Positions 24,908 to 58,419 of a stretch of DNA of 64,000 nucleotides are shown here, piece after piece. The position numbers and the translations under genes are program-made. Origin of the DNA: Macrostomum lignano (lineage: Eukaryota); assembly GCA_002269645.1 (NCBI GenBank), contig NIVC01000282.1, forward strand, positions 372,001 to 436,000. The letters are read 5' to 3'. A model generated the notes under the pieces. It made no database searches. It was not told the origin of the DNA and saw only the letters and a list, made by a program, of their open reading frames with translations. The stretch's first letter is position 1. Each line of letters starts with the position of its first letter.

Positions 24908-26092
24908 TTTTCTACATGTAGTCGGTCTTCGTAGCGAGTTTTTGTAGCGAGTACCGTGCATCTCTAGCGAATGCGTGTGTATTTAAGCGTGCAATATATT
25001 GGAACCTGGTCTGTTTGTAGTCTCTACCGAGTACAGATCGTGTATGCTATAGTACAGTGCAAGAGGGGCTGTTGGCCATGCAGCAGAGCAGTCAAAATAG
25101 GCCAGGAGAGAGCTAATCGCTGGGCCACACTGCACACGCCACACACGCGCACTGCGCGTAGCTACAGCTTGGACGTGACATAAAAATCTACATCGCATCT
25201 ATGTAGGAGACGTAGTTAGAAATCCTACAGGGCCTATATGTATGCATGGGCGTACACTTCGTACAGTATATCCAAGTCCGAGAGCAAGTAACATGCTTCC
25301 TCACGTTTAAACAAAGAAAAAGTAATGGTTTTGCTTATTGAAACACGATTTTTTTCGAAAACAACAGTCAAGTTTTCTGATGTTATAATTAAATCATTTT
25401 TATATCGTTGTATTTGTAGAACATCTTTATTTCAGTTGTAGGTGTTAATGTTTAATGTTTAAATGAAAAATTAGCCTTCTTTTCGACCACTTAAATAATC
25501 AATGACTGAATGCAGTACTTACCTAATTTCTGAAAATGCCTGTTGCACTTTACAAGTTCGAAACGATTAAGACGTGTAGTTTTGTTGTTTATACAATTAC
25601 AAATCATTGACTGTTTAATATATTATAACTGCTGACTTGATGAACAGTCGATTGCTATATTGTAGAATTTGTAGCCTAACCATTAGTAAAGTAATAGGCC
25701 TAGTACTAAAAACTATTTTGTGAACAAAAAGCAGTGGCTCAAAAAGTCAAAGGCCAAAAAGGGGCAGGATGAAACCCCTAACTATGCAGGAGATACCAAG
25801 CAAATTTGGACCAAAGTTCAGCTTGCCCCCATTTAGGGTCTTCAATTCAATCTTTAAAACACTGCAACTGCAATCTCCCTTGGCCATCACAGAATTTATT
25901 ATTGTGTCACTGCAAAACCCAACAGAATAGTAGGCCTAACCAGTTTAGATTTTACGAAATTGAGTCATATAGCCTTATATATTTTAACCAACTTTTTTAT
26001 CTGAAAAATGTAGTAAAATTCCTAAATATAATAGGCCTATATAATAAATAAACCTTTTGAATTAGCCTATAATCTTTTTCTATTAAATATAA

Positions 26093-26684
26093 GGCAGTGC
26101 TTATCCCCACGGTACCGTAGGAATAATTTCTGTCTTATTCCAACGGTACCGTGGGGATAATTTTCTGCTTATCCGCACGGCACACTGACGAGATAGCTGC
26201 CTATCTTCTACATATGCCGTGGGTTCATAATTTAGTTTAGTACTTACGGTTTGAGTGCAATATAACAACATAACTTTGCTTGGCTATTATTTTGATAGAA
26301 GTAAAGATTTAATGGCCTTTTTACGCAAAAAAACACTTTTTTGTATTTATGACGTATGATTTAAGATGAATTGCTCTAGTAATTGTTTATAATCTAAGAA
26401 CTTTTAGCAACTAGTCTAATCCCGACATCCCCGAAAAGTCCATTGCCGCTGCTTCTGTAGACTTCTTACTAGACATGTAAATTCTCAATTTGTTTGTATA
26501 GATTATTGCATTGCTTCAACAATTCACCCATGCGGATAAGCAGAAAATTATTCCCACGGCATATGTAGAAGATAGGGCAGCTATCTCGTCAATGTGCCGT
26601 GCGGATAAGCAGAAAATTATCCCCACGGTACCGTTGGAATAAGACAGAAATTATTCCTACGGTACCGTGGGGATAAGCACTGCC
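26093..26684. mobile_element. MULE-like MITE
   Basis: About 130-bp TIRs starting GGCAGTGCTTATCCCCACGGTACCG; perfect 9-bp TSD TAAATATAA (26084-26092 and 26685-26693). Confidence 0.9.
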
Positions 26685-27119
26685 TAAATATAAACATATG
26701 AATAATGAATTAAGTCTATTTTCTATTTATTAAGTAAGTTTACAGTCATTGATATCAACAACTATGCTTTGTTTGATAAATTAGATTATTATAAAGTATA
26801 GACTACAATTATTAACATATGTAGTTTGCAAGGAGAAGCATTTTCAATTAATTATAGTAACAAGGGACAAGCCAAAAAAGTCTAAAAATACTAACTAAAG
26901 TATAAAATATAATTATATAATATTGTTTTATTTTAAGATGGTATATTTTTGCTTTTTGGAAGATTTTAAATACTATTACACATATCAAAGCAATATATTT
27001 TTATTTATACTATATGACTATAAGAAGGCAAAGAGTCATATCTATTTGATTTTAATTAACTCTTTTAAGCATACAAGCTATACATAGTTTATATCTATAT
27101 GCAAATACATTTAGAACTA

Positions 27120-27500
27120 TTAAATTTGTCTATCACATAGGCTTGTCATCTAAACATATTGCAAGGGGCTATCATAGGCTTATAATATAGGATGTATCAA
27201 ATAGGCCTGTCACACAAAGTATATCACTTTGGTCTGTCATACAGAATGTATCATAGAGACCTATCATACAGGGTATTATCACATGGGTCTGTCATATAAA
27301 ATGTATCTTAGAGGCCTATCATACAGAGTATATCACATGGGTCTGTCATACAGAATGTATCAGAGGCCTATCACATGGGTCTGTCATACAGAATGTATCA
27401 GAGGCCTATCACATAGGGTCTGTCATACAGAATGTATCAGAGGCCTATCACATAGGGTATATCACATGGGTCTGTCATATAGAATATATCATATAGGCCT
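27120..27500. repeat. Degenerate minisatellite
   Basis: Repeats of GTCTGTCATACAGAATGTATCAGAGGCCTATCACATGG. Confidence 0.75.
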
Positions 27501-27711
27501 GTTCTCATCATCAAGTAGTGTACAATCTATTGGCAAATATGCACTCAAAATTTTATAAGTATACAGGTAGACTTGATCCCTGATGCACTGTCTTATTTTA
27601 TTCTAATAGGGAGTCTGAACTAATACTACTCACTAGTAACAATACTAATGCTATTTATTATATCTATCACTAAAAGTAACAACAGTACTACATTTTAATT
27701 ATTTTTTTCAG

Positions 27712-28420
27712 TCGTCCCCCTGTCAGAAGTTTGCCTGTGCCATACAGGACTGTCTGGCGCGTAAGCCACTTTTCTTATCATCACACAGATACTAAAATAG
27801 AATAACTAGATTAGCCACTCAGGCAAATATGCTTAGTAAAAAGGCTTTCTACTTTCAGTTCAGTAGCAAAGAAGAATATATAAGCTATTTTATAAAAAAG
27901 AAAGGCAGCTGAAATGACTTTGATAAGTTTAGAAGCCCAAGCTTGCAGGCGTAAACAGCTTGCTAATTGGTTCAGCAATAATGTACATTGGCCAGTCCAC
28001 TGAAAGGCAATAAAAATTGGGTGGTGGGAGGGGGTAGTGTGGAAAGGCTCGTTTCGAGGGTTTAAGCTGGGGGTAAGAGCCAATAAATGAGCCTTGGCTT
28101 TAAAAATACATTAAAATGCTTCTGTTTAACTTACTACTGAACTGAACTCACACGCTAATGTGCTGAGTGGCCCATCTAGTTACTTAGTGCATTATATGCT
28201 GTATTTGAGCTTTTCAACAGGTCACAACTACAACCCGGAGGAGTGTCGCTCGGCTATGCAAAATCTGATTGATTGTTGCGCCAGATTTCGTCACGTACGG
28301 CAGAGCTGCTGCGAGCTGGGAGGCGGTAGCTCTTCAGCTGCTGCTAATCCTGTTTCTCAATCGGCTAAGTCTTCTACACATAGACAGGATTCTGCTGGGG
28401 TATCTTCCTATAGCCAATGA
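27712..28420 (+). CDS. CMC4: Cx9C motif-containing protein 4 (CMC4 / p8-MTCP1NB-like), start codon not in these exons
   Basis: Exons 27712-27760 (TTTTTTTCAG acceptor, GTAAGC donor) and 28221-28420 splice to SSPCQKFACAIQDCLARHNYNPEECRSAMQNLIDCCARFRHVRQSCC..., the PCQKxACxIQxCL...C...L..CC pattern of CMC4. Confidence 0.85.
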
Positions 28421-28599
28421 GAAAGATGTGTATTAATTGTCGAGATTTTAAAAATTGTTTGTCTACTAATTATAAGTCCGATGCTTATGGCTTAATAGTT
28501 GCTTAAAAATGTACTTACTTGTGTGATCGTGGTTGGGCTTCATTTAATTATTGTCAATGGTTTTTTCATTGTTTTGTCCATTCTTAATAACGTCGAAGT

Positions 28600-29100
28600 T
28601 TCAAGTTCCGATTTGACAGCTTCGAGTCCCGATTTGACAGCTGCAAGTCCCGATTTGACAGCTTCAAGTCCCGATTTGACAGCTTCGAGTCCCGATTTGA
28701 CAGCTGCAAGTCCCGATTTGACAGCTGCAAGTCCCGATTTGGCAGTTTCAAGTCCCGATTTGACAGCTTCGAGTCCCGATTTGACAGCTGCAAGTCCCGA
28801 TTTGACAGCTTCAAGTCCCGATTTGGCAGTTTCAAGTCCCGATTTGGCAGTTTCAAGTCCCGTTTTGACAGCTTCAAGTCCCGATTTGACAGCTTCGAGT
28901 CCCGATTTGACAGCTTCAAGTCCCGATTTGACAGCTTCAAGTCCCGATTTGGCAGCTTCAAGTCCCAATTTGACAGCTTCAAGTCCCGATTTGGCAGTTT
29001 CAAGTCCCGATTTGACAGCTTCAAGTCCCGATTTGGCAGTTTCAAGTCCCAATTTGACAGCTTCAAGTCCCAATTTGACAGCTTCAAGTCCCGAGCTGAC
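28600..29100. repeat. 21-bp minisatellite
   Basis: TCAAGTCCCGATTTGACAGCT units, followed by inverted partial copies near 29170-29218. Confidence 0.9.
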
Positions 29101-29409
29101 AGCAACTTTTTTTTCGCGGAAATTTAGGTGGCTTAAAAATCTTTTTTTAGGGTTCTGAAGTCTTAGCTTCGAGTCCCGATTTGACAACTCGGGACTTGAA
29201 GCTCGGGACTCGGGACTTAGCCTATTTAATAAATTTATTCTGAAAGTCAAGCATTTATTTCATACCAAAAATCGTTTTATTCGTGTAGGTTTTCTTGTAA
29301 AATTCACAAGCTGCTTATAAATACATAATAGTTTCATCAGATAAAATTTAAGTTCTTTAACACTTGTGCAGCTAAAGTTTTATAATTTATTTGCATATTT
29401 CCATTGTCT

Positions 29410-29985
29410 CAGATCCTCAGTTGCTAAACCACAGCCACCCTCCAGATCCTCAGCTGCTGGGCCAGCCTCCCAAATCCTCAGCTGCTGGGCCAGCCTCCTA
29501 AATCCTCAGCTGCTGGGCCAGCCTCCCAAATCCTCAGCTGCTGGGCCATCCTCCCAGATCCTCAGTTGCTGAGCCAGCCTCCCAGATCCTCAGTTGCTAA
29601 ACCACAGCCATCCTCCTAGATCCTCAGTTGCTGGGCCAGCCTCCCAGATCCTCAGTTGCTAAACCACAGCCATCCTCCTAGATCCTCAGTTGCTGGGCCA
29701 GCCTCCCAGATCCTCAGTTGCTGGGCCAGCCTCCCAGATCCTCAGTTGCTGAGCCAGCCTCCCAGATCCTCAGTTGCTGAGCCAGCCTCCCAGATCCTCA
29801 GTTGCTGGGCCAGCCTCCCAGATCCTCAGTTGCTGAGCCAGCCTCCCAGATCCTCAGTTGCTGGGCCAGCCTCCCAGATCCTCAGTTGCTGGGCCAGCCT
29901 CCCAGATCCTCAGTTGCTGAGCCAGCCTCCCAGATCCTCAGTTGCTGAGCCAGCCTCCCAAATCCTCAGCTGTTGGGCCAGCCTT
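29410..29985. repeat. 28-bp minisatellite (same unit as 34270-34510)
   Basis: GGGCCAGCCTCCCAGATCCTCAGTTGCT units. Confidence 0.9.
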
Positions 29986-30041
29986 CTAGGTTGCCAGTCA
30001 AGCGCTGCAATCGCACAATCCTAACAATTGTTTTTCCCCAG

Positions 30042-32088
30042 CCAAAGCAACGCGAATCAAAGCAGCAAGCCTGGCGGCTTCAGAAGCGCCAGCAGTCTGA
30101 GCTCAGTGAGCTGGCGGATGCCCAGCAACAGCAGCCGCAGGGGGAGGCAGGCTCAGTCTGCTCCGTGTGCGGCTGCGACAGGCCAGCGGGCTGCCATTAC
30201 GGCGCGGTGACCTGCCACGCCTGCAAGTCGTTTTTCAAGCGCACAGTGCAACACTCGCTGGCCTACGCCTGCATGCGGCTGGCCCGCCACTGCGCCCTCG
30301 TGTCCGAGCGGACCCGCGCCTGCGGCTACTGCCGATTCAGGAAATGCCTTCGCGTCGGGATGCGGCCCCAGCTGGTTAGGTCGTTGAGCGACTGTGTCAA
30401 CGACGATCAGGATCAGGCATCGTCTTTGGCCTCATCGACCACCACCGTCGCTGCCGCAGCCGCCGCCACTCCGTCTGTGGAAGCCGCGGTCTCTGCAGTT
30501 GAGGCCGATCTGGTCGAGATTGAGCAGTTCACCATTGATCAGTCCGGCCTGGACGGACTGCCATTGGAGGAGCGGGTCATCCGGTGCGTCACTCTGGCCT
30601 GTGACGGATTTTTAAGCTCTCTGATTGTCTGGGCCAAGCGAGTGTCTGGCTTCAATCAGCTGATCATGCAGGACCGAGTGGCCCTGATACAGCGCCGCTG
30701 GATGGTGGTGATGATACTGGGGATGGCCCGCAGTTCGCATCCGTACACGGACACGCTGCACTTTTGTAGCAATTTCCAGCTGAGCGAAGAGCAGGTAAGC
30801 TAATTGCATTCAATATTTTTATCTATCAGCTTTTCGATCATATCTTCAACCTGTCAATTTTGGTACCTTGTAATCTTATCAAATTTGTCAGCTAATCAAA
30901 TCTATCAACCTTTTCAACCTATCAACAAATCTATCAACCTTGACAACCTATCAATCAAGTCTATCAATCTTGTCAACCTATCAATCAAGTCTATCAACCT
31001 TGAAAACTGTCAATCAAGTCTATCAACCTTGTCAACCTATCAATCAAGTCTATCAATCTTGTCAACCTATCAATCAAGTCTATCAACCTTGAAAACTGTC
31101 AATCAAGTCTATCAACCTTGTCAAACTATCAATCAAATCTGTCAACCTTGTCAACCTATCAACCTTGACAATTATCAATCAAGTCTATCAAGCGTGTCAA
31201 CCTATCAATCAAATCTGTGAATTCTGCCAACCTATCAATCAAATCTATCAACCTTGTCAACCTATCAATCAAGTCTATCAACCTTGAAAACTGTCAATCA
31301 AGTCTATCAACCTTGTCAAACTATCAATCAAATCTGTCAACCTTGTCAACCTATCAACCTTGTCAACCTATCAACCTTGTCAACCTATCAACCTTGTCAA
31401 CCTATCAACCTTGTCAACCTATCAATCAAGTCCCAAGCGTGTCAACATATCAATCAAATCTGTGAATTCTGCCAACCTATCAATCAAATATATCAACCTT
31501 GTCAACCTATCAATTAAATCTATCAACCTTGTCAACCTATCAATCAAGTCTCAAGCGTGTCAACCTATCAATCAAGTCTCAAGCGTGTCAACCTATCAAT
31601 CAAGTCTCAAGCGTGTCAACCTATCAATCAAATCTGTGAATTCTGCCAACCTATCAATCAAATCTATCAACCTTGTCGACCCATCAACCCAGGCGAACAG
31701 CTTCCGCCTGCCCCGCATTGACCCCCGCGTGCGCACAATCTGCCAGCGCTACACGCAGCTCAACGTGACCCCACTGGAGACAAATCTCTTAAGCTACGTT
31801 TTGTTCCTGGAGAGCAGCTGCTACTTTGATTGGGCCAATCAGGCCGCCATTGAAGAGCTGCAGCTGGGGTACCTTCGCAGGCTCCGTCAGGCCTGTCGCG
31901 GCGGAGTGCGCCTGGGTGTCCTGCTGCAGCTGCACAACGACTTGATGGCAGCCCAGCTGCTCGCTCTCGGCTACATGGACCGGACACTTAACCTTGAGGG
32001 CCGGCCACTGCCGCCGCTGGCTAATGAAGTTCTACAGCACGTGCTGGCGCTCGGCCTTCCCGTCAGCGAGCCCCACAGATACTTCTGA
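30042..32088 (+). CDS. Nuclear hormone receptor, divergent, ERR/NR3-like; start codon not in these exons
   Basis: Exons 30042-30794 and 31693-32088 (phase 0, about 382 aa). Two C4 fingers (CSVC...CHACKSFFKRTVQ...CMRLARHC...CGYCRFRKCLRVGM). The LBD has WAKRVSGFNQLIMQDRVALI and WMVVMILGMARSSHPYTDTLHF, resembling ERR [20 protein letters not shown]. Confidence 0.9.
30830..31690. repeat. Compound minisatellite filling the nuclear-receptor intron
   Basis: CAACCTATCAATCAAGTCTATCAACCTTGT-type units. Confidence 0.9.
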
Positions 32089-32089
32089 T

Positions 32090-32230
32090 CCTATATCCTC
32101 AAATAGTCTGATCCCATATCTCCTAGATCCCATATCCCCTGATAGTCTGATCCCATATCCCCCGATAGTCTGATCCCATATCCCCCGATAGTCTGATCCC
32201 ATATCCCCCGATAGTCTGATCCCAAATCTC
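32090..32230. repeat. 23-bp minisatellite just after the receptor stop codon
   Basis: GATAGTCTGATCCCATATCCCCC units. Confidence 0.8.
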
Positions 32231-32719
32231 CAGGTAATTTCTAGCTATTCTGACTCCAAGTTCTTTTTTTAGATCCCAATTCTAATATTATTATCGAAAT
32301 TGTGGAAATGTTTAGTAACTGTTATTTGCAGGTATGTCAGAATTCTTTTTATGTACCGGTAGTTACTACTCATAATTTCTTCTAGTTTTATTTTTCTAAC
32401 AGTTACCAATGTCAAAAGAACAGTTTTTATTGGTGTCGTTGTTGTGGTAATGTAAATACCGTATTAGCATATTGGTTATTTGCTTTTAACTCCTGTTATT
32501 AATGCTGCAGGAGTTGTTATTGTTGCTGTAGTTCGAGTGTGAATCTTTCTACAGTATTTTAGTGTCGTGCGACTTCTCTGCTAATGCTATCTGTTGTTTA
32601 CCGATTGTTGTGAGCTGCCATACTTTGAGGCTGTGTGCATTGATTTGTACTTTTACTCATAATTTTGCCGCGATGCACGGGCAATTTCTGTGTGCTGCCA
32701 TCCCATCTCTATTCCTCGT

Positions 32720-32990
32720 GTTCTGCTACCCCCAACCTACCCCCAACCTCTATCCCTCTGTGTGCTGCTACCCCCAACCTCTATCCCTCTGTGTGCTGCT
32801 ACCCCCAACCTCTATCCCTCTGTGTGCTGCTACCCCCAACCTCTATCCCTCTGTGTGCTGCTACCCCCAACCTCTATCCCTCTGTGTGCTGCTACCCCCA
32901 ACCTCTATCCCTCTGTTGTGCTGCTACCCCCCAACCTTTATCCCTCTGTGTGCTGCAACCCCCAACCTCTATCCCTCTGTGTGCTGCCAC
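32720..32990. repeat. 31-bp minisatellite
   Basis: CTACCCCCAACCTCTATCCCTCTGTGTGCTG units. Confidence 0.9.
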
Positions 32991-33334
32991 CCCACTCCGA
33001 TATCTTTCGGTACCCTTTAAGCTTCTCTATTTGAATTTTAAGCTGTGAATATGCCTGTCTACTTTGCTTTTATGTTTTCTTGTAGGTTTCTTGACTTACT
33101 TTCTGACTCTGTAGACCATAATGTGAAACTATAAATGAGTAAATATCTCATATGAAAAACTGGATTCTTTTTTTTCAATCTGTATTTAATACAAACAATT
33201 TCTAAATAATAATGTGTGCAATTGAACCACTATATTTAAATGGAATTTGCTTTGAAACCTCTTTTTAGAAACAAATTTTTTTTTATAAATTAAATTCTAA
33301 GTCAGCTGTATCTAGATGGTAGTATATGGAACAT

Positions 33335-34110
33335 GTGAAGTGGCAGTGTGGGGGAACAGGTGAGATGGCAGTGTGGGGGAACCGGTGAGATGGCAGTGTG
33401 GGGGAACCGGTGAGATGGCAGTGTGGGGGAACAGGTGAGATGGCAGTGTGGGGGAACAGGTGAGATGGCAGTGTGGGGGAACCGGTGAGATGGCAGTGTG
33501 GGGGAACAGGTGAGATGGCAGTGTGGGGGAACAGGTGAGATGGCAGTGTGGGGGAACAGGTGAGATGGCAGTGTGGGGGAGCCGGTGAGATGGCAGTGTG
33601 GGGAACCGGTGAGATGGCAGTGTGGGGAACCGGTGAGATGGCAGTGTGGGGGAACAGGTGAGATGGCAGTGTGGAGGAACAGGTGAGATGGCAGTGTGGG
33701 GGAACCGGTGAGATGGCAGTGTGGGGAACCGGTGAGATGGCAGTGTGGGGGAACCGGTGAGATGGCAGTGTGGGGGAACAGGTGAGATGGCAGTGTGGGG
33801 GAGCCGGTGAGGTGGCAGTGTGGGGGAACAGGTGAGGTGGCAGTGTTGGGGAACAGGTGAGATGGCAGTGTGGGGGAACAGGTGAGATGGCAGTGTGGGG
33901 GAACAGGTGAGATGGCAGTGTGGGGGAACCGGTGAGATGGCAGTGTGGGGGAACAGGTGAGATGGCAGTGTGGAGGAACAGGTGAGATGGCAGTGTGGGG
34001 GAACAGGTGAGATGGCAGTGAGGGGGAACCGGTGAGGTGGCAGTGTTGGGTAACAGGTGAGATGGCAGTGTGGGTGAACAGGTGAGGTGGCAGTGTGGGG
34101 GAACCGGTGA
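33335..34110. repeat. 25-bp G-rich minisatellite
   Basis: GTGAGATGGCAGTGTGGGGGAACAG units. Confidence 0.92.
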
Positions 34111-34125
34111 GATTGCAGACTGCAG

Positions 34126-35254
34126 GATGACCAAACACCCCTGCAATTTAAGTTGCGGATGTCGGCCAATCAGCAACACTGGGAGGCGCTGCGGCGGGAG
34201 CGTCAGTTCCAGCGCCGGGCCTTTGCGCAGCAGCAAATTCAGGTGCGTTCGGTCTGGTCGATTTTTCTGATTGTCTCCCAGATCCTCAATTGCTGGGTCA
34301 GCCTCCCAGATCCTCAGTTGCTGGGTCAGCCTCCCAGAGTGTCAGTTGCTGGGCCAGCCTCCCAGATCCTCAGTTGCTGGGCCAGTCTCCCAGATCCTCA
34401 GTTGCTGGGTCAGCCTCCCAGATCCTCAGTTGCTGGGTCAGCCTCCCAGATCCTCAGTTGCTGGGCCATCCTCCCAGATCCTCAGTTGCTGGGCCATCCT
34501 CCCAGATCCCAGGCTGTAACATTTGATTTTGTCAACATTTGCCTGGTCAATTTATCCACATTATACAGCTAGATAGCTAGCATTGCTGAGTCAAACTTGC
34601 TATTCATATACATCTATTTGATCAGGCCGCCGGCTCGGACCCGTCAATGAAGGGCACCTTGGACAGCGAGTTGCGCGCCCAACAGCAGGCTTTAGACGCG
34701 GCGACCAGGCGACACGCCGAGCTGACGGCCGACGCTGCCGCCACCGCCAGTGGCGCCGACGCGACTACCCAGTCTTCGGCTAAGCTGCCGCGCCGCTTCA
34801 CGGTGGGTTGCTGAATTATACTACTTAATAGGTTCTGCTTGTACTACTAATTGGTCGTCTTAAATGTGTTTTCTGATCGCAAGCGTAGGGTCCTCACTAT
34901 TTGGGTCCGGACGATCGGCTCATGCGGTAAACGCAGCTGACTCTCGCGCCACGACTAAGGTTCGAGGTTCGATTCTGTGCACGGCTACATTAATTTGAGA
35001 CTCGTGCAGGAAACTTGAACAACCCCCAAGGAATAGAGTGTACACATGCCCGACGGTCAGGGCCTCTGTGTATGAGTGCGTGCCTGTGTACAGTACTGGT
35101 GCGCTTGTATGTGCTCAGGATCAGCGAAATGGGCAGAATCACCTCAGCACAGAGAAGTGGCAAACTGTGCTACTAAAAGTAGAAACATAGGCTTTTATGC
35201 AAATAGTTATTAAATTTTCATTTCCAGTCGATCAACTACGCCCAGCAGTGGTGA
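34126..35254 (+). CDS. Small hypothetical coiled-coil protein (about 95-106 aa)
   Basis: Exons 34126-34242, 34626-34802 and 35228-35254, all phase 0, give DDQTPLQFKLRMSANQQHWEALRRERQFQRRAFAQQQIQ|AAGSDPSMKGTLDSELRAQQQALDAATRRHAEL...KLPRRFT|SINYAQQW*. GC-rich islands with GT-AG sites; in-frame ATG at 34159. The 5' end is uncertain. Confidence 0.6.
34270..34510. repeat. 28-bp minisatellite (same unit as 29410-29985)
   Basis: GGGCCAGCCTCCCAGATCCTCAGTTGCT units, inside an intron. Confidence 0.9.
34905..35210 (+). mobile_element. tRNA-derived SINE-like element
   Basis: Head with an A-box-like TCGGCTCATGCGGTAA and a B-box GGTTCGATTC at tRNA-like spacing, but the anticodon and acceptor stems do not pair. 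It is followed by a unique body ending in an AT-rich tail. Confidence 0.5.
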
Positions 35255-35729
35255 CCGATGTGCGATGAATCTCTGAAGCCGTGACGGACGAGATCGAAAA
35301 TAAAAGCATGACAGACTAAATTGCTTATTTTTTGTTCATTCCTAAATTCTTTCGCTAAATTGCTCGTAAAATCAGTTTTTTTGCAACTTTTCTCATCTTT
35401 TGTTGTATTTATTCTCTCTAATTTTTATACGATATTTTCATTATCTTTTATTATCTTTTCCTAGCCGCTTTTTGGACTAGCTGCTCAAATTTATCCACTG
35501 AATTCAATGAATGCTCAACTGCGCTTCACTGTTTTTGCTACACTCTGCTTTGTTAAGCAATTTTTATGGTCAGCTTTTACTATGATTTTTTATTGATCAA
35601 GTACAAACTAATAAATATTGCTTTTATAGTGCTTTATCTTTATGTTCATAGAGTTGATTGAAAACACCAACATTTGCGACAAGGATAGCCTGAATTGTGC
35701 TTTTTCATCTTATTGACCTTGGAGGTCAC

Positions 35730-36140
35730 GCTGATCGAGGGAGGTCAAATTAATCTGAAGGAGGGTCATATAGAGATGAGGAAGGTTATATTAATCTGAG
35801 AGAGGTCACATTGATCTGGGGGAGGTCACATTGATCTGAAGCAGGTCATATTAATCTGTAGGGAGCTCATATTAATCTGAGGGAGGTCATATAGATCTGA
35901 GGGAGGTTATATTAATCTGAGAGAGGTCAGTGGTCACATTGATCTGGGGGAGTTGGTCATTGATTATTATTGATAAGGAGGTCACATTGATCCCGGGGAG
36001 GTGGAGGTCATGTGTATCTTAGGAAGGTCACGTTGATTTGAAGGCGATTACATCAATCTGAGGAAGATTGCATTAACCTGAGGGAGGTCACACTGATCGG
36101 AGGAAGGTCACACAGATATGATCGAGGGAGGTCACGCTGA
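35730..36140. repeat. Degenerate ~20-bp minisatellite
   Basis: GGGAGGTCACATTGATCTGA variants. Confidence 0.75.
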
Positions 36141-53559: not shown

Positions 53560-55429
53560 ATGGCCGAAAGCAGTCAGCTGCAGATGGGCTACAAGATCGG
53601 TGGCATAGACAAGCTGGAACCCAGATACAAGTGCGCCCACTGTCACCTGCTGCTGAGAGAGCCGATGCAAGGAGACTGCGGTCACCGCTACTGCAGGAAC
53701 TGCGTGCAGCTCAAGTTCAACGAGGCCAAGCAGAAGGGCGAGCCGTCTCTCTGCCTGGAATGCGACTCAAGCGACAGCGACAGGGCAGAAATTTCGCCAG
53801 ACCGAACCTACCCTGACATGGCCATCAAGAGGGAGATCAACAAGTCGCTGAAAGTGCAGTGCCCGAACTGTCCTTGCGACAAGGTGATGCAGGTAAGGGA
53901 GCTGGACGATCACCTTCAAGAGTGCAAGTTCAGGCCCGAGCCTTGCGAGCTGTGCGGAGAATTGGTTGCTATGCAGAGTCTGGCTGAGCACAAAGAGCAG
54001 AAATGCCACAGAAGACTTGTGCCCTGCGATGTGTGCAAGGAGCGAGTAGCCTTTGAGTCATTGGATGAGCACAAGAGCTCAACTTGCATTGGCAGTACAG
54101 TGGAGTGCGAGTTCTGCTTGGCTCGCGTCAAGGACAACGAAGAGGCCAAGAGCTCTCACTGGTTGGAGGAATGTCCGGTCGGGTGGCACACCGGACAGTG
54201 TCCTTTCGGGTGTCCTGAAATGTCCGAGGGTTGGGAGAAGCACCGGGTACAGCACCAAGCCACCCACATTGACAGGCTGCTGGCCTTGTCAAAGCGGCAG
54301 CAGCAGCAGCAGGCTGATCCACCAGAGCAGAGCCTCGTGCCCGTCTTCAGGGGTGCAGCGGCGGCGGCAGCGGCGGGAACTTCAGTGCCGGCCTCCGAGT
54401 TGACTGGGTCCGACTTTGAAGAGCTGAGCCGGCTGAAGGAGAAGGCGGCTGCCTTGGAGTCCAGGATGAAGTCCATGGCGCTGCCCACAGACTTGGCGAA
54501 GATGCTGAAGGACCTCCAAGGCAGCATCGTGCAGGGCGACAAGGTGAAGGAGCTGCTTCAGGTGATCAAGGAGCAGTTCGACAACTGCTACGACAAGATC
54601 AGGCAGTACGAGCTGCGGATGCAGAAGGACTTGGAGAAGAAGCTGGACATCGAGCGGAAGCACCAGGAGCTGGTGAAGCTGCTGGCCTACAAAGAGATGA
54701 AGATTCTCGACCTCGAGAGGCGCGTTGAGGTTCTTGAGCACGCTGGCTACGACGGGGTTCTTGTGTGGAAGATCACGGATGTGCGGCGGCGCAAAGAGGA
54801 GGCGCGGGAGGGCAAAGTGTGCTCGATCTACTCGCCTCCGTTCTACACGGGCAAGGCTGGGTGAGTTTTGACTGACGCTTCCACGGGTTCGAATTCTCTC
54901 CAATCCGCCCCTCAATCCGCCAATCCACTCCTCAATCCGCCAATTCGCCCTTCAATCCGCTAATCCGCCACTCAATCCGCCACTCAATCCGCCAGCGCCA
55001 ATCCACATCTCAATCCGCCAATCCGCCCCTATCCACCCCTTAATCCGCCCCTCAATCCACCCCATTCGCCCCAGCTACAAGATGTGTGGACGACTCTACC
55101 TGAACGGCGACGGCGCGGGCAAGAACACGCACATCAGCCTCTTCTTCGTGATCATGCGCGGTGCCTTCGACGCCTTGCTGCCGTGGCCCTTCGCCAAGAA
55201 GGTCTCCATGATGCTGCTGGACCAGAACTTCGACGAGCACGTGATCGACGCCTTCAAGCCGGACACTTCGTCGTCTTCGTTCAAGCGGCCCAGCACGGAC
55301 ATGAACATCGCATCGGGCTGCCCGCTGTTCATGCCGCTGGCCGACTTCGAGAACGGCAGTCGCGGCTACGTCAAGGACGACGCCATGTTCATCAAGTTTA
55401 TCGTGGACAAAAGCGACCTGCCTACTTAA
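53560..55429 (+). CDS. TRAF3: TNF receptor-associated factor, TRAF2/3-like (~551 aa)
   Basis: Exons 53560-54860 and 55075-55429. RING (CAHCHLLLREPMQGDCGHRYCRNC...CLEC), TRAF zinc fingers, coiled coil and MATH domain (WKIT...SPPFYT..GYKMCGRLYLNGDG...HISLFFVIMRG.FDALLPWPF...SGCPLF). The TRAF3 versus TRAF2 assignment is approximate. Confidence 0.95.
54890..55070. repeat. CAATCCGCC-type short tandem repeat in the TRAF intron
   Basis: Repeated CAATCCGCC / CTCAATCCGCC. Confidence 0.85.
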
Positions 55430-57830: not shown

Positions 57831-58419
57831 TCCATTTGGTCACTATATACATGCAAGGCTTTTAAAAAGCGTTAAATTTCCGGAAAGCTCCAATTTCAAT
57901 GCTTGTAATTCCAAATTCCAAAAGTTTGAAGCCGGGTAAAGCTGCTTTATAAAGTGCACTTTTTGTTAATTGAGTCTTCGCAGTTAGAGAGCAAATAACA
58001 AGTTACCAAGTAATTTACTTGTAGTGTTTTAAATTGCCACTCAAATATACTTTGACAATTTTCATCAATAATAATGCTACGAGTAGTACGTTACGATATG
58101 TGTACCTTTATTCAGTTGCTTGTTAGGAAATGTTGCCTTGTCATAATTTTAGTCGTATTACTCACTACTCGTATTGCTCGTATTAATCCTGTAGACTACA
58201 CTTCATTATTTAGTTTAAATACACAGTTTTAGTGTGAAAATATTTACATTTCATTGACAAACTTTTTATTGCTTTCTTTCATTTTTAATTGCGCGCAATA
58301 TAGAGTTAGATATACAACAATATTTTTACATGTATTATTAGGGCACATTCAATGCCCAATATCAATAGCTGATGAATGATAAATATGATCAATAGCGGTG
58401 ATCAGACAGTGAGCGGGCT

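What the first reader, a model, noticed from the sequence alone, without database searches (positions are those of the whole stretch)
27700..35254. Operon-like cluster whose genes may get their start codon from a spliced leader
Seen: CMC4 and the nuclear receptor each begin at a strong acceptor (TTTTTTTCAG|TCG TCC CCC TGT at 27712; TTTTTCCCCAG|CCA AAG CAA at 30042) in phase 0, with no in-frame ATG before the conserved domain. Adding one AUG gives MSSPCQKFAC..., about the normal CMC4 N-terminal length, and MPKQRESKQ.... The third gene (34126) and TRAF (acceptor 12 nt before its ATG) also sit in frame with an acceptor, though both have their own ATG. The gaps between the three co-oriented genes are mostly minisatellite, leaving little room for promoters or first exons. 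Established: flatworm spliced leaders end in AUG, which can act as initiator Met. Inference: a polycistronic unit resolved by SL trans-splicing, joining a mitochondrial Cx9C protein, a nuclear receptor and an unknown protein.
Basis: partly seen in the sequence, partly recalled or inferred. Interest (0 to 1): 0.72.

Follow-up and report, generated by a model that had tools for sequence, protein, structure and literature searches.

The report
Flatworm genes borrowing the spliced-leader start codon
In this Macrostomum lignano scaffold a CMC4 gene and a nuclear-receptor gene have no start codon of their own and almost certainly take it from the AUG at the end of the trans-spliced leader, a mechanism already documented in flatworms, so this is a clean example rather than a new kind of thing.

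Summary
The window is Macrostomum lignano Mlig_3_7, scaffold NIVC01000282.1 (window position 1 = record position 372001).

CMC4 (27712-27760, 28221-28420) and a nuclear receptor (30042-30794, 31693-32088) each begin at a pyrimidine-tract CAG in phase 0. Neither has an in-frame ATG before its conserved domain.

The published M. lignano spliced leader ends in ATG. About 30-39% of genes are trans-spliced and about 15% lie in operons whose spacers are inflated by repeats.

- **CMC4 annotation:** GenBank marks it 5'-partial, starting exactly at 27712. That pipeline cut 5' ends at peaks of leader-containing reads.
- **CMC4 paralogues:** two copies have no ATG codon anywhere in the ORF, yet evolve under constraint.
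- **Receptor paralogues:** the acceptor CAG is replaced by ATG in the same frame. Their annotated CDS starts after the next in-frame AG, 6 nt downstream.
- **Spacers:** 1621 nt and 2037 nt, with 566 and 849 nt outside tandem repeats. Both pass the published limit of 1 kb after subtracting repeats. The CMC4-receptor spacer has no plausible splice donor.

No RNA reads could be examined, so the polycistronic transcript remains inferred. The in-frame acceptors of gene 3 and TRAF are no more than chance would give. Verdict: a new member of a known kind, of modest interest.

The parts
27700..27711 (+). Trans-splice acceptor of CMC4 (tatttttttcag). It matches the published M. lignano SL acceptor motif [T/C]TNCAG.
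   Evidence: Conserved in both paralogous loci. The GenBank 5'-partial CDS begins at the next base.
27712..27760 (+). CMC4 exon 1 (SSPCQKFACAIQDCLA, then one base of the next codon). It holds no ATG. The donor is GTAAGC.
   Evidence: Pfam CMC4 E 2e-12. P0009 is 100% identical.
28221..28420 (+). CMC4 exon 2, with the TGA stop at 28418-28420.
28600..29103 (+). 21-bp minisatellite (24 copies) in the CMC4 3' region and spacer.
29228..29233 (+). The only AATAAA between CMC4 and the receptor. It is the candidate CMC4 poly(A) signal.
   Evidence: The role is inferred.
29434..29984 (+). 28-bp minisatellite (19 copies) just upstream of the receptor acceptor. Many of its units read CCTCCCAG, which is acceptor-like.
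30030..30041 (+). Trans-splice acceptor of the nuclear receptor (tgtttttccccag). In paralogues L001 and L002 the CAG is ATG.
30042..30794 (+). Nuclear receptor exon 1 (PKQRESK..., DNA-binding domain and first part of the ligand-binding domain). An alternative in-frame acceptor, AAG (30045-30047), would put the exon start at 30048.
30894..31687 (+). 30-bp minisatellite that fills most of the receptor intron.
31693..32088 (+). Nuclear receptor exon 2, with the TGA stop at 32086-32088.
33328..34118 (+). 25-bp minisatellite (32 copies) that ends 7 nt before the gene 3 acceptor. Smaller arrays lie at 32084-32228 and 32737-32993.
34126..34242 (+). Gene 3 exon 1. The acceptor is ctgcag. Its own ATG at 34159 is in frame with the acceptor. 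An out-of-frame ATG sits at 34127.
34626..34802 (+). Gene 3 exon 2.
   Evidence: The same exon structure is seen in UniProt A0A1I8H9G5.
35228..35254 (+). Gene 3 exon 3, with the TGA stop at 35252-35254. An AATAAA lies at 35299.

Best explanation
CMC4 and the nuclear receptor are SL-trans-spliced genes of Macrostomum lignano whose genomic ORFs lack an initiator codon.

The 35-nt spliced leader, which ends in AUG, is joined at the acceptor in phase 0. For CMC4 this is 27712. For the receptor it is 30042 and/or the next in-frame AG at 30048. The leader's terminal AUG then becomes the initiator Met, giving MSSPCQKF... and MPKQRESK... or MQRESK....

The three co-oriented genes (CMC4, the receptor and orphan gene 3) most likely form one repeat-inflated operon. 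In that reading, transcription starts upstream of CMC4 and trans-splicing resolves the precursor.

Shown here: the gene structures, the lack of any ATG, the acceptor phase, the annotated 5'-partial boundaries, purifying selection, and the spacer composition.

Established from the literature: the leader sequence, the frequency of trans-splicing and operons in this species, and leader-AUG initiation in flatworms.

Inferred: that a leader is actually joined at these exact sites in this copy, and that the genes share one primary transcript.
For: (1) Organism and leader. The receptor protein is 99% identical to M. lignano PAA84904.1. The window is identical to NIVC01000282.1 over the 20,709 bases compared (window 17712-38420). 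The leader ends in ATG. About 30% of genes are trans-spliced and 15% are in operons, and repeats inflate operon spacers, with a 1 kb repeat-adjusted threshold.

(2) GenBank BOX15_Mlig011155g1 (P0009, 82 aa, 'partial') starts at exactly 27712. In that annotation, 5' ends were cut at peaks of leader-containing reads and ORFs were called by TransDecoder. A 5'-partial ORF that begins at the base after the CAG therefore implies a transcript 5' end there.

(3) The receptor CDSs PAA84904.1 and PAA66082.1 are also 'partial'. They begin at CAA, directly after the AG of CCAAAG.

(4) There is no in-frame ATG before either conserved domain. CMC4 in L001 and L002 has no ATG codon in the whole ORF, yet shows 4 synonymous to 2 non-synonymous codon differences. 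The receptor shows 9:4 and 8:2.

(5) In L001 and L002 the receptor acceptor CAG reads ATG in the same frame. This is either a genome-encoded Met at the predicted position or an imprint of leader-bearing RNA reads left by Pilon polishing. Either reading supports Met-Pro-Lys-Gln.

(6) The CMC4-receptor spacer has 0 GTRAG motifs. It has 4 donor-like sites against 17.7 in shuffles. It has no phase-0 ATG-plus-donor candidate against 4.1 expected. An acceptor with no donor upstream is the stated condition for trans-splicing.

(7) The non-repeat spacer lengths are 566 and 849 nt.

(8) By the naming convention.g1 and .g2 are genes within one transcriptional unit. The receptor in L001 is Mlig028721g2 and CMC4 here is Mlig011155g1.

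(9) Cheng et al. 2006 found the leader AUG in frame in 28% of S. mansoni trans-spliced mRNAs and required by more than 40 cDNAs.
Against: - No leader-containing read, long read or precursor RNA could be inspected. The 5' ends are inferred from CDS boundaries in GenBank.
- The receptor and gene 3 are not annotated in GenBank on this scaffold. The submitted annotation dropped transcripts that overlap repeats.
- The transcript-name prefix is also shared by transcriptional units clustered at 95% identity. The 'g2' tag is therefore only suggestive.
- Spacers of 1.6-3.1 kb could hold promoters.
- Weak donor-like candidates exist upstream of CMC4.
- Gene 3 has its own ATG, no homologues outside the species, and near-neutral substitution.
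Confidence: 0.72

Rival explanations
1. Each gene is trans-spliced and uses the leader AUG, but the cluster is not an operon. Each gene has its own promoter in the unique spacer sequence and its own outron. About 60% of trans-spliced M. lignano genes are monocistronic.
For: Only about 40% of trans-spliced genes are assigned to operons. The spacers are 1.6-3.1 kb and vary in length between copies. They keep 330-nt and roughly 330-nt unique AT-rich segments that are 90-98% conserved between copies. Nothing here shows a precursor RNA.
Against: The repeat-adjusted distances of 566 and 849 nt fall under the published 1 kb operon threshold. The receptor in L001 carries a .g2 tag. Gene order is kept in all three copies, although that is expected for recent duplicates.
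Confidence: 0.22
2. The genes have conventional, cis-spliced 5' exons that carry an ATG. These exons lie further upstream and were missed by both the reader and the annotation.
For: Parasitic flatworms often share acceptors between cis- and trans-splicing. Thirteen weak candidates (donor score 3 of 6) exist in the 5.7 kb upstream of CMC4.
Against: The genome-guided, RNA-seq-based annotation found no such exon and left the CDSs 5'-partial at the acceptor. No candidate exists at all in the CMC4-receptor spacer. There is no conserved block resembling an exon upstream of CMC4. Paralogous CMC4 copies keep the same acceptor.
Confidence: 0.04
3. The ATG-less ORFs are decaying duplicates (pseudogenes) in a polyploid genome, and the acceptors are incidental.
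For: M. lignano carries many duplicated regions. Three copies of this locus exist.
Against: All three copies keep intact ORFs. Synonymous changes exceed non-synonymous changes in CMC4 and the receptor. The exons are 97-100% identical. The genes are in the expressed-transcript-based GenBank annotation.
Confidence: 0.02

Closest known systems
Flatworm mRNAs that use the spliced leader's 3'-terminal AUG as initiator Met (Cheng, Cohen, Ndegwa & Davis 2006, J Biol Chem 281:733; called 'slORFs' in PMC9851317)
   Same: The leader ends in AUG. The acceptor is in phase 0 with an ORF that has no usable AUG of its own. The predicted N-terminus is of normal length for the family.
   Different: That work was done in Schistosoma mansoni with cDNAs and translation assays. 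Here the case rests on genome sequence, annotation boundaries and paralogue comparison in the free-living M. lignano. The M. lignano papers I searched for AUG or start-codon terms say nothing on use of the leader AUG. I did not look further.
M. lignano operons with repeat-inflated spacers (Ustyantsev & Berezikov 2021, PMC8629364; transcriptional units of Wudarski et al. 2017, PMC5730564)
   Same: Adjacent genes lie on the same strand. The downstream genes start at SL-type acceptors. The spacers are mostly tandem repeats, and the repeat-adjusted distance is under 1 kb.
   Different: The published mode is about 100 bp after repeat subtraction, whereas here it is 566 and 849 nt. Operon membership of this locus was not looked up in their tracks because they are not available to the tools.
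C. elegans operons resolved by SL2 trans-splicing
   Same: A polycistronic precursor is cut into monocistronic mRNAs by 3'-end formation plus trans-splicing.
   Different: M. lignano has a single leader with no specialised SL2. Its spacers are kilobases long and rich in repeats rather than about 100 nt. The nematode leader does not supply the initiator AUG.

Membership tests
Leader-AUG-initiated (slORF) flatworm mRNA | The organism has SL trans-splicing and its leader ends in AUG. | tested here: met
   The organism was identified as M. lignano. The published leader is ...TTGCATG.
Leader-AUG-initiated (slORF) flatworm mRNA | The acceptor is in phase 0 with the ORF, with no stop between junction and domain. 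| tested here: met
   Met for CMC4 at 27712 and for the receptor at 30042 and 30048.
Leader-AUG-initiated (slORF) flatworm mRNA | There is no genome-encoded in-frame AUG that could yield a functional protein. | tested here: met
   The first ATG is codon 29 in CMC4 and codon 78 in the receptor, both inside the domains. CMC4 in L001 and L002 has no ATG at all.
Leader-AUG-initiated (slORF) flatworm mRNA | Leader sequence is found joined at the site in RNA. | not testable with these tools
   Only indirect evidence exists: GenBank 5'-partial CDS boundaries at the acceptor from a pipeline that cuts at leader-read peaks.
Leader-AUG-initiated (slORF) flatworm mRNA | Translation starts at the leader AUG. 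| not testable with these tools
   Established for S. mansoni only.
M. lignano operon (criterion of PMC8629364) | The genes are adjacent, on the same strand and not interrupted by an opposite-strand gene. | tested here: met
   Only repeat-derived ORFs lie on the minus strand in the spacers.
M. lignano operon (criterion of PMC8629364) | The repeat-adjusted intergenic distance is under 1000 bp. | tested here: met
   566 and 849 nt after subtracting TRF arrays only.
M. lignano operon (criterion of PMC8629364) | The downstream gene is SL trans-spliced. | tested here: inconclusive
   For the receptor it is inferred from the partial CDS start in paralogues. For gene 3 there is only a CTGCAG motif and no annotation.
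M. lignano operon (criterion of PMC8629364) | A polycistronic precursor transcript exists. | not testable with these tools
   The only hint is the locus tag Mlig028721g2.

The most novel reading that the evidence does not exclude
The paralogues record an evolutionary toggle between a leader-donated and a genome-encoded initiator.

In two homeologous copies, the receptor's acceptor CAG has become ATG at exactly the codon the leader AUG would occupy. A path CAG to AAG to ATG would destroy the acceptor and create a start codon in a single step. Trans-splicing then appears to move to the next AG, which is again in phase 0.

If real, this shows selection keeping every usable acceptor in frame with the leader AUG. 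It would also give a natural allelic series for testing how flatworm genes gain or lose dependence on the leader for translation.
Probability: 0.3. Interest if true: 0.5.

Novelty: new member of a known kind. Interest (0 to 1): 0.33.

Why it matters
It gives two clear, conserved-gene examples in the transgenic flatworm model M. lignano of proteins whose only possible initiator is the spliced leader's AUG. One is a mitochondrial Cx9C protein and the other a nuclear receptor.

There are practical consequences. Gene predictors and GenBank leave such genes '5'-partial' or extend them wrongly; for example, UniProt A0A1I8H9X9 starts FPQPKQ. Reporter or rescue constructs for these genes need an added ATG or a trans-splice acceptor.

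The CAG/ATG difference between homeologous copies, if it is real, offers a simple test of how dependence on the leader AUG evolves.

It does not change the picture of flatworm gene expression.

Tried and rejected
- **No transcript-derived proteins beginning with Met:** the protein collection holds only NCBI and UniProt genome-derived models for these genes. No assembled transcript with a leader was available.
- **Gene identifiers:** Mlig011155, Mlig028721 and Mlig007341 were not found in any paper or in the held supplements.
- **Leader sequence:** no intact copy in the window or loci, so there is no SL RNA gene here.
- **RNA genes:** Rfam and ARAGORN found nothing in the window.
- **Gene 3:** no Pfam family and no homologue outside M. 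lignano among 1.84 billion representatives. Its function stays unknown, and its coding status is weak.
- **Pilon/RNA-seq polishing artefact for the ATG in L001 and L002:** considered but not settled.
  - For: the assembly was polished with RNA-seq. The changed bases match the leader's last four bases, CATG. No Met-initiated model from the older ML2 assembly turned up.
  - Against: the same change is absent at the CMC4 acceptor in all three copies. The annotated CDS start fits a real shift to the next AG.
- **CMC4-receptor fusion by cis-splicing from the CMC4 exon 1 donor:** rejected, because it is the wrong phase and supplies no ATG.
- **Conservation profile as a detector of hidden exons:** uninformative. 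Divergence between copies is mosaic, about 90% upstream of 30040 and 97-100% downstream, including introns and spacers.


Full report
**What the window is.** A locus fetched through the CMC4 protein, NIVC01000282.1:389712-410420 of assembly Mlig_3_7 (GCA_002269645.1), is base-for-base identical to window 17712-38420. Window position 1 is therefore record position 372001. Two further scaffolds carry collinear homeologous copies of the same gene order: L001 = NIVC01000356.1 and L002 = NIVC01001592.1.

**Checking the observation.**
- **CMC4:** The gene is 27712-27760 plus 28221-28420. Exon 1 follows tatttttttcag. The reading frame is closed by TAA at 27646 with no ATG in between. The first in-frame ATG is codon 29, beyond the first Cx9C helix. 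The Pfam CMC4 match begins at residue 4 of M+ORF.
- **Nuclear receptor:** The gene is 30042-30794 plus 31693-32088. Exon 1 follows tgtttttccccag. The frame is closed at 29946 with no ATG in between. The first in-frame ATG is codon 78, inside the zinc-finger domain.
- **Gene 3:** The gene is 34126-34242, 34626-34802 and 35228-35254. It follows ctgcag, and its own ATG (34159) is 11 codons downstream, in frame.
- **TRAF:** There is a ttttag 12 nt before its ATG at 53560.
- **Spacers:** They are 1621 nt (65% tandem repeat) and 2037 nt (58%).

The description is accurate. For CMC4 and the receptor, a strong acceptor in phase 0 inside the short open stretch before the domain is unlikely by chance, roughly 0.004 jointly given one such site per 666 nt. 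For gene 3 and TRAF the in-frame acceptor carries no weight. The prior is 1/3. For three other genes in the window with their own ATG, the nearest upstream CAG I picked by eye is out of frame.

**What is known for this organism.**
- M. lignano has one 35-nt spliced leader, CGGTCTCTTACTGCGAAGACTCAATTTATTGCATG.
- Between 30% and 39% of genes are trans-spliced, and about 15% are assigned to operons.
- The authors showed that operon spacers are inflated by repeats. They used a repeat-adjusted threshold of 1 kb.
- In the Mlig_3_7 annotation, transcriptional units were cut into genes at peaks of leader-containing reads and at poly(A) sites (the TBONE pipeline). ORFs were called with TransDecoder. 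Transcripts that overlap repeats were removed before GenBank submission.
- Names of the form MligNNNNNN.g1/.g2 denote genes within one transcriptional unit.
- The leader AUG can serve as initiator in flatworms. It is in frame in 28% of S. mansoni trans-spliced mRNAs and required by more than 40 cDNAs (Cheng et al. 2006, as summarised).

**Evidence that these two genes use the leader AUG.**

1. GenBank's CMC4 entry on this scaffold (BOX15_Mlig011155g1, 82 aa, 'partial') begins at exactly 27712 with SSPCQKF. A 5'-partial ORF starts at the first in-frame codon of its transcript. The transcript model therefore starts at the base after the CAG. That is what a cut at a leader-read peak produces. It is not what an unprocessed or cis-spliced transcript would give.

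2. The receptor entries in L001 and L002 are also 'partial'.

3. The CMC4 copies in L001 and L002 have Val instead of the single Met, so the whole 82-codon ORF contains no ATG. Even so, the copies differ from the window by 4 synonymous and 2 non-synonymous codons. The receptor shows 9:4 and 8:2. These are constrained genes that cannot start on a codon of their own.

4. The CMC4-receptor spacer has no GTRAG motif. It has 4 loosely donor-like sites against 17.7 in shuffles. It has no ATG-containing open segment ending in a phase-0 donor, against 4.1 expected, with 2% of shuffles as low. The acceptor thus has no cis partner, which is the condition for trans-splicing quoted. Upstream of CMC4 there are only weak candidates (donor score 3 of 6), fewer than in shuffles.

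**An unexpected detail at the receptor acceptor.**

In L001 and L002 the sequence is tttttcccATG|CCAAAG, where the window has tttttccCCAG|CCAAAG. Two adjacent substitutions turn the acceptor CAG into an in-frame ATG. That ATG sits at exactly the codon the leader AUG would occupy. In those two loci the GenBank CDS starts at CAA, immediately after the next AG (CCAAAG|CAA), which is again in phase 0.

- **Reading A (real substitution):** The acceptor was lost and trans-splicing moved 6 nt downstream, giving MQRESK.... Supporting points are that the CMC4 acceptor shows no comparable change in any copy, and that the annotated start fits the shift.
- **Reading B (artefact):** The assembly was polished with Pilon using RNA-seq as well as genomic reads, and CATG is the leader's last four bases. 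Leader-bearing reads that cross an SL|CCAAAG junction could therefore have overwritten CA with AT. Consistent with this, no Met-initiated model from the older ML2 assembly turned up.

I cannot decide between the two and put them near even. Either way the site is tied to a Met-Pro-Lys-Gln reading. In the window copy, the first AG after the pyrimidine tract (exon start 30042) is the expected site, with 30048 as an in-frame alternative.

**The operon.**

Points in favour:
- The three genes are co-oriented, with only repeat-derived ORFs on the other strand.
- The non-repeat spacer lengths, 566 and 849 nt, pass the published criterion.
- Spacer length varies between copies through minisatellite copy number (1621/3098/1621 nt and 2037/2638/2958 nt), while the unique parts persist. 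This is the behaviour the M. lignano authors describe.
- The only AATAAA between CMC4 and the receptor (29228) lies after the first minisatellite. That leaves about 240 unique nt before the receptor acceptor.
- CMC4 here is '.g1' and the receptor in L001 is '.g2'.

Points against, or missing:
- No RNA that spans the gaps could be examined.
- The name prefix is also shared by transcriptional units clustered at 95% identity.
- The distances are well above the published mode of about 100 bp.

I put the operon at about 0.6. Use of the leader AUG I put at about 0.85 for CMC4 and 0.8 for the receptor.

**Gene 3.**
- It has no Pfam match and no homologue outside M. lignano in 1.84 billion representatives.
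- It shows 3:7, 1:2 and 2:6 synonymous to non-synonymous codon differences.
- It is an orphan under little constraint.
- If a leader is spliced at 34126, its AUG would add 11 residues (MDDQTPLQFKLR-MSAN...). It would also pre-empt an out-of-frame ATG at 34127, which is absent in L001.
- Nothing shows that this happens.

**Verdict.** Both mechanisms are already described for flatworms and for this species, and the genome's own annotation pipeline implicitly treats these genes as trans-spliced. This is a new, tidy member of a known kind. The CAG/ATG difference between homeologues is the only element that could be of wider interest.

Noticed in passing
window 57961-57990, minus strand: A fragment, TCTCTAACTGCGAAGACTCAATTAAC, matches the interior of the M. 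lignano spliced leader (17 nt exact, about 22 of 23 overall). It lacks the 3' TTGCATG and a GTAAG donor. Sm-site-like AAUUUGG motifs follow it. It does not fold better than shuffles (z = +0.9) and has no Rfam hit. It is probably a relic of an SL RNA gene or of a retroposed 5' end.
   Followed up: partly
L001 9992-9994 and L002 9992-9994 (equivalent to window 30039-30041): The paralogous copies carry ATG where the window has the acceptor CAG, in frame with the receptor ORF. This is either a real acceptor-to-start-codon change or a Pilon/RNA-seq polishing imprint of the leader's terminal CATG.
   Followed up: partly
L001 6154-6896 and L002 7631-8373 (CMC4 copies): The only Met codon of the window's CMC4 ORF (codon 29) is GTG in both paralogues. 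Their whole 82-codon ORF therefore has no ATG.
   Followed up: yes
window 29434-29984 and 34275-34509: The same 28-bp minisatellite (GCCAGCCTCCCAGATCCTCAGTTGCTGG) lies in the same orientation in two places: just upstream of the receptor acceptor, and inside intron 1 of gene 3. Many of its units read CCTCCCAG, a strong acceptor-like motif, so the array offers many decoy acceptors.
   Followed up: no
window 26080-26680: About 600 bp are present only in the window copy and are absent from L001 and L002. The segment is bounded by 34-bp repeat arrays that are reverse complements of each other (26098-26174 and 26597-26679). It looks like a MITE-like insertion about 1 kb upstream of CMC4.
   Followed up: no
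window 25000-36000 compared with L001 and L002: Divergence between copies is mosaic. Upstream of about 30040 the window is roughly 90% identical to both L001 and L002, and those two are nearly identical to each other there. Downstream identity is 97-100% including introns and spacers, and L002 is closer to the window than L001 is. This suggests recombination or gene conversion among homeologous copies.
   Followed up: partly
window 34890-34975 (gene 3 intron 2): A G+C-rich segment has a tRNA T-arm-like GGTTCGATTC motif and may be a tRNA-derived SINE. ARAGORN calls no tRNA here.
   Followed up: partly
window 30156-30360 (receptor DNA-binding domain): The P-box region reads C-H-A-C-K-S-F-F instead of the usual C-E-G-C-K-G/S-F-F. 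The best hits outside Macrostomum are only 31-33% identical (NR4A, USP/RXR). This is a divergent, lineage-specific nuclear receptor with a 41%-identical paralogue in the species.
   Followed up: no
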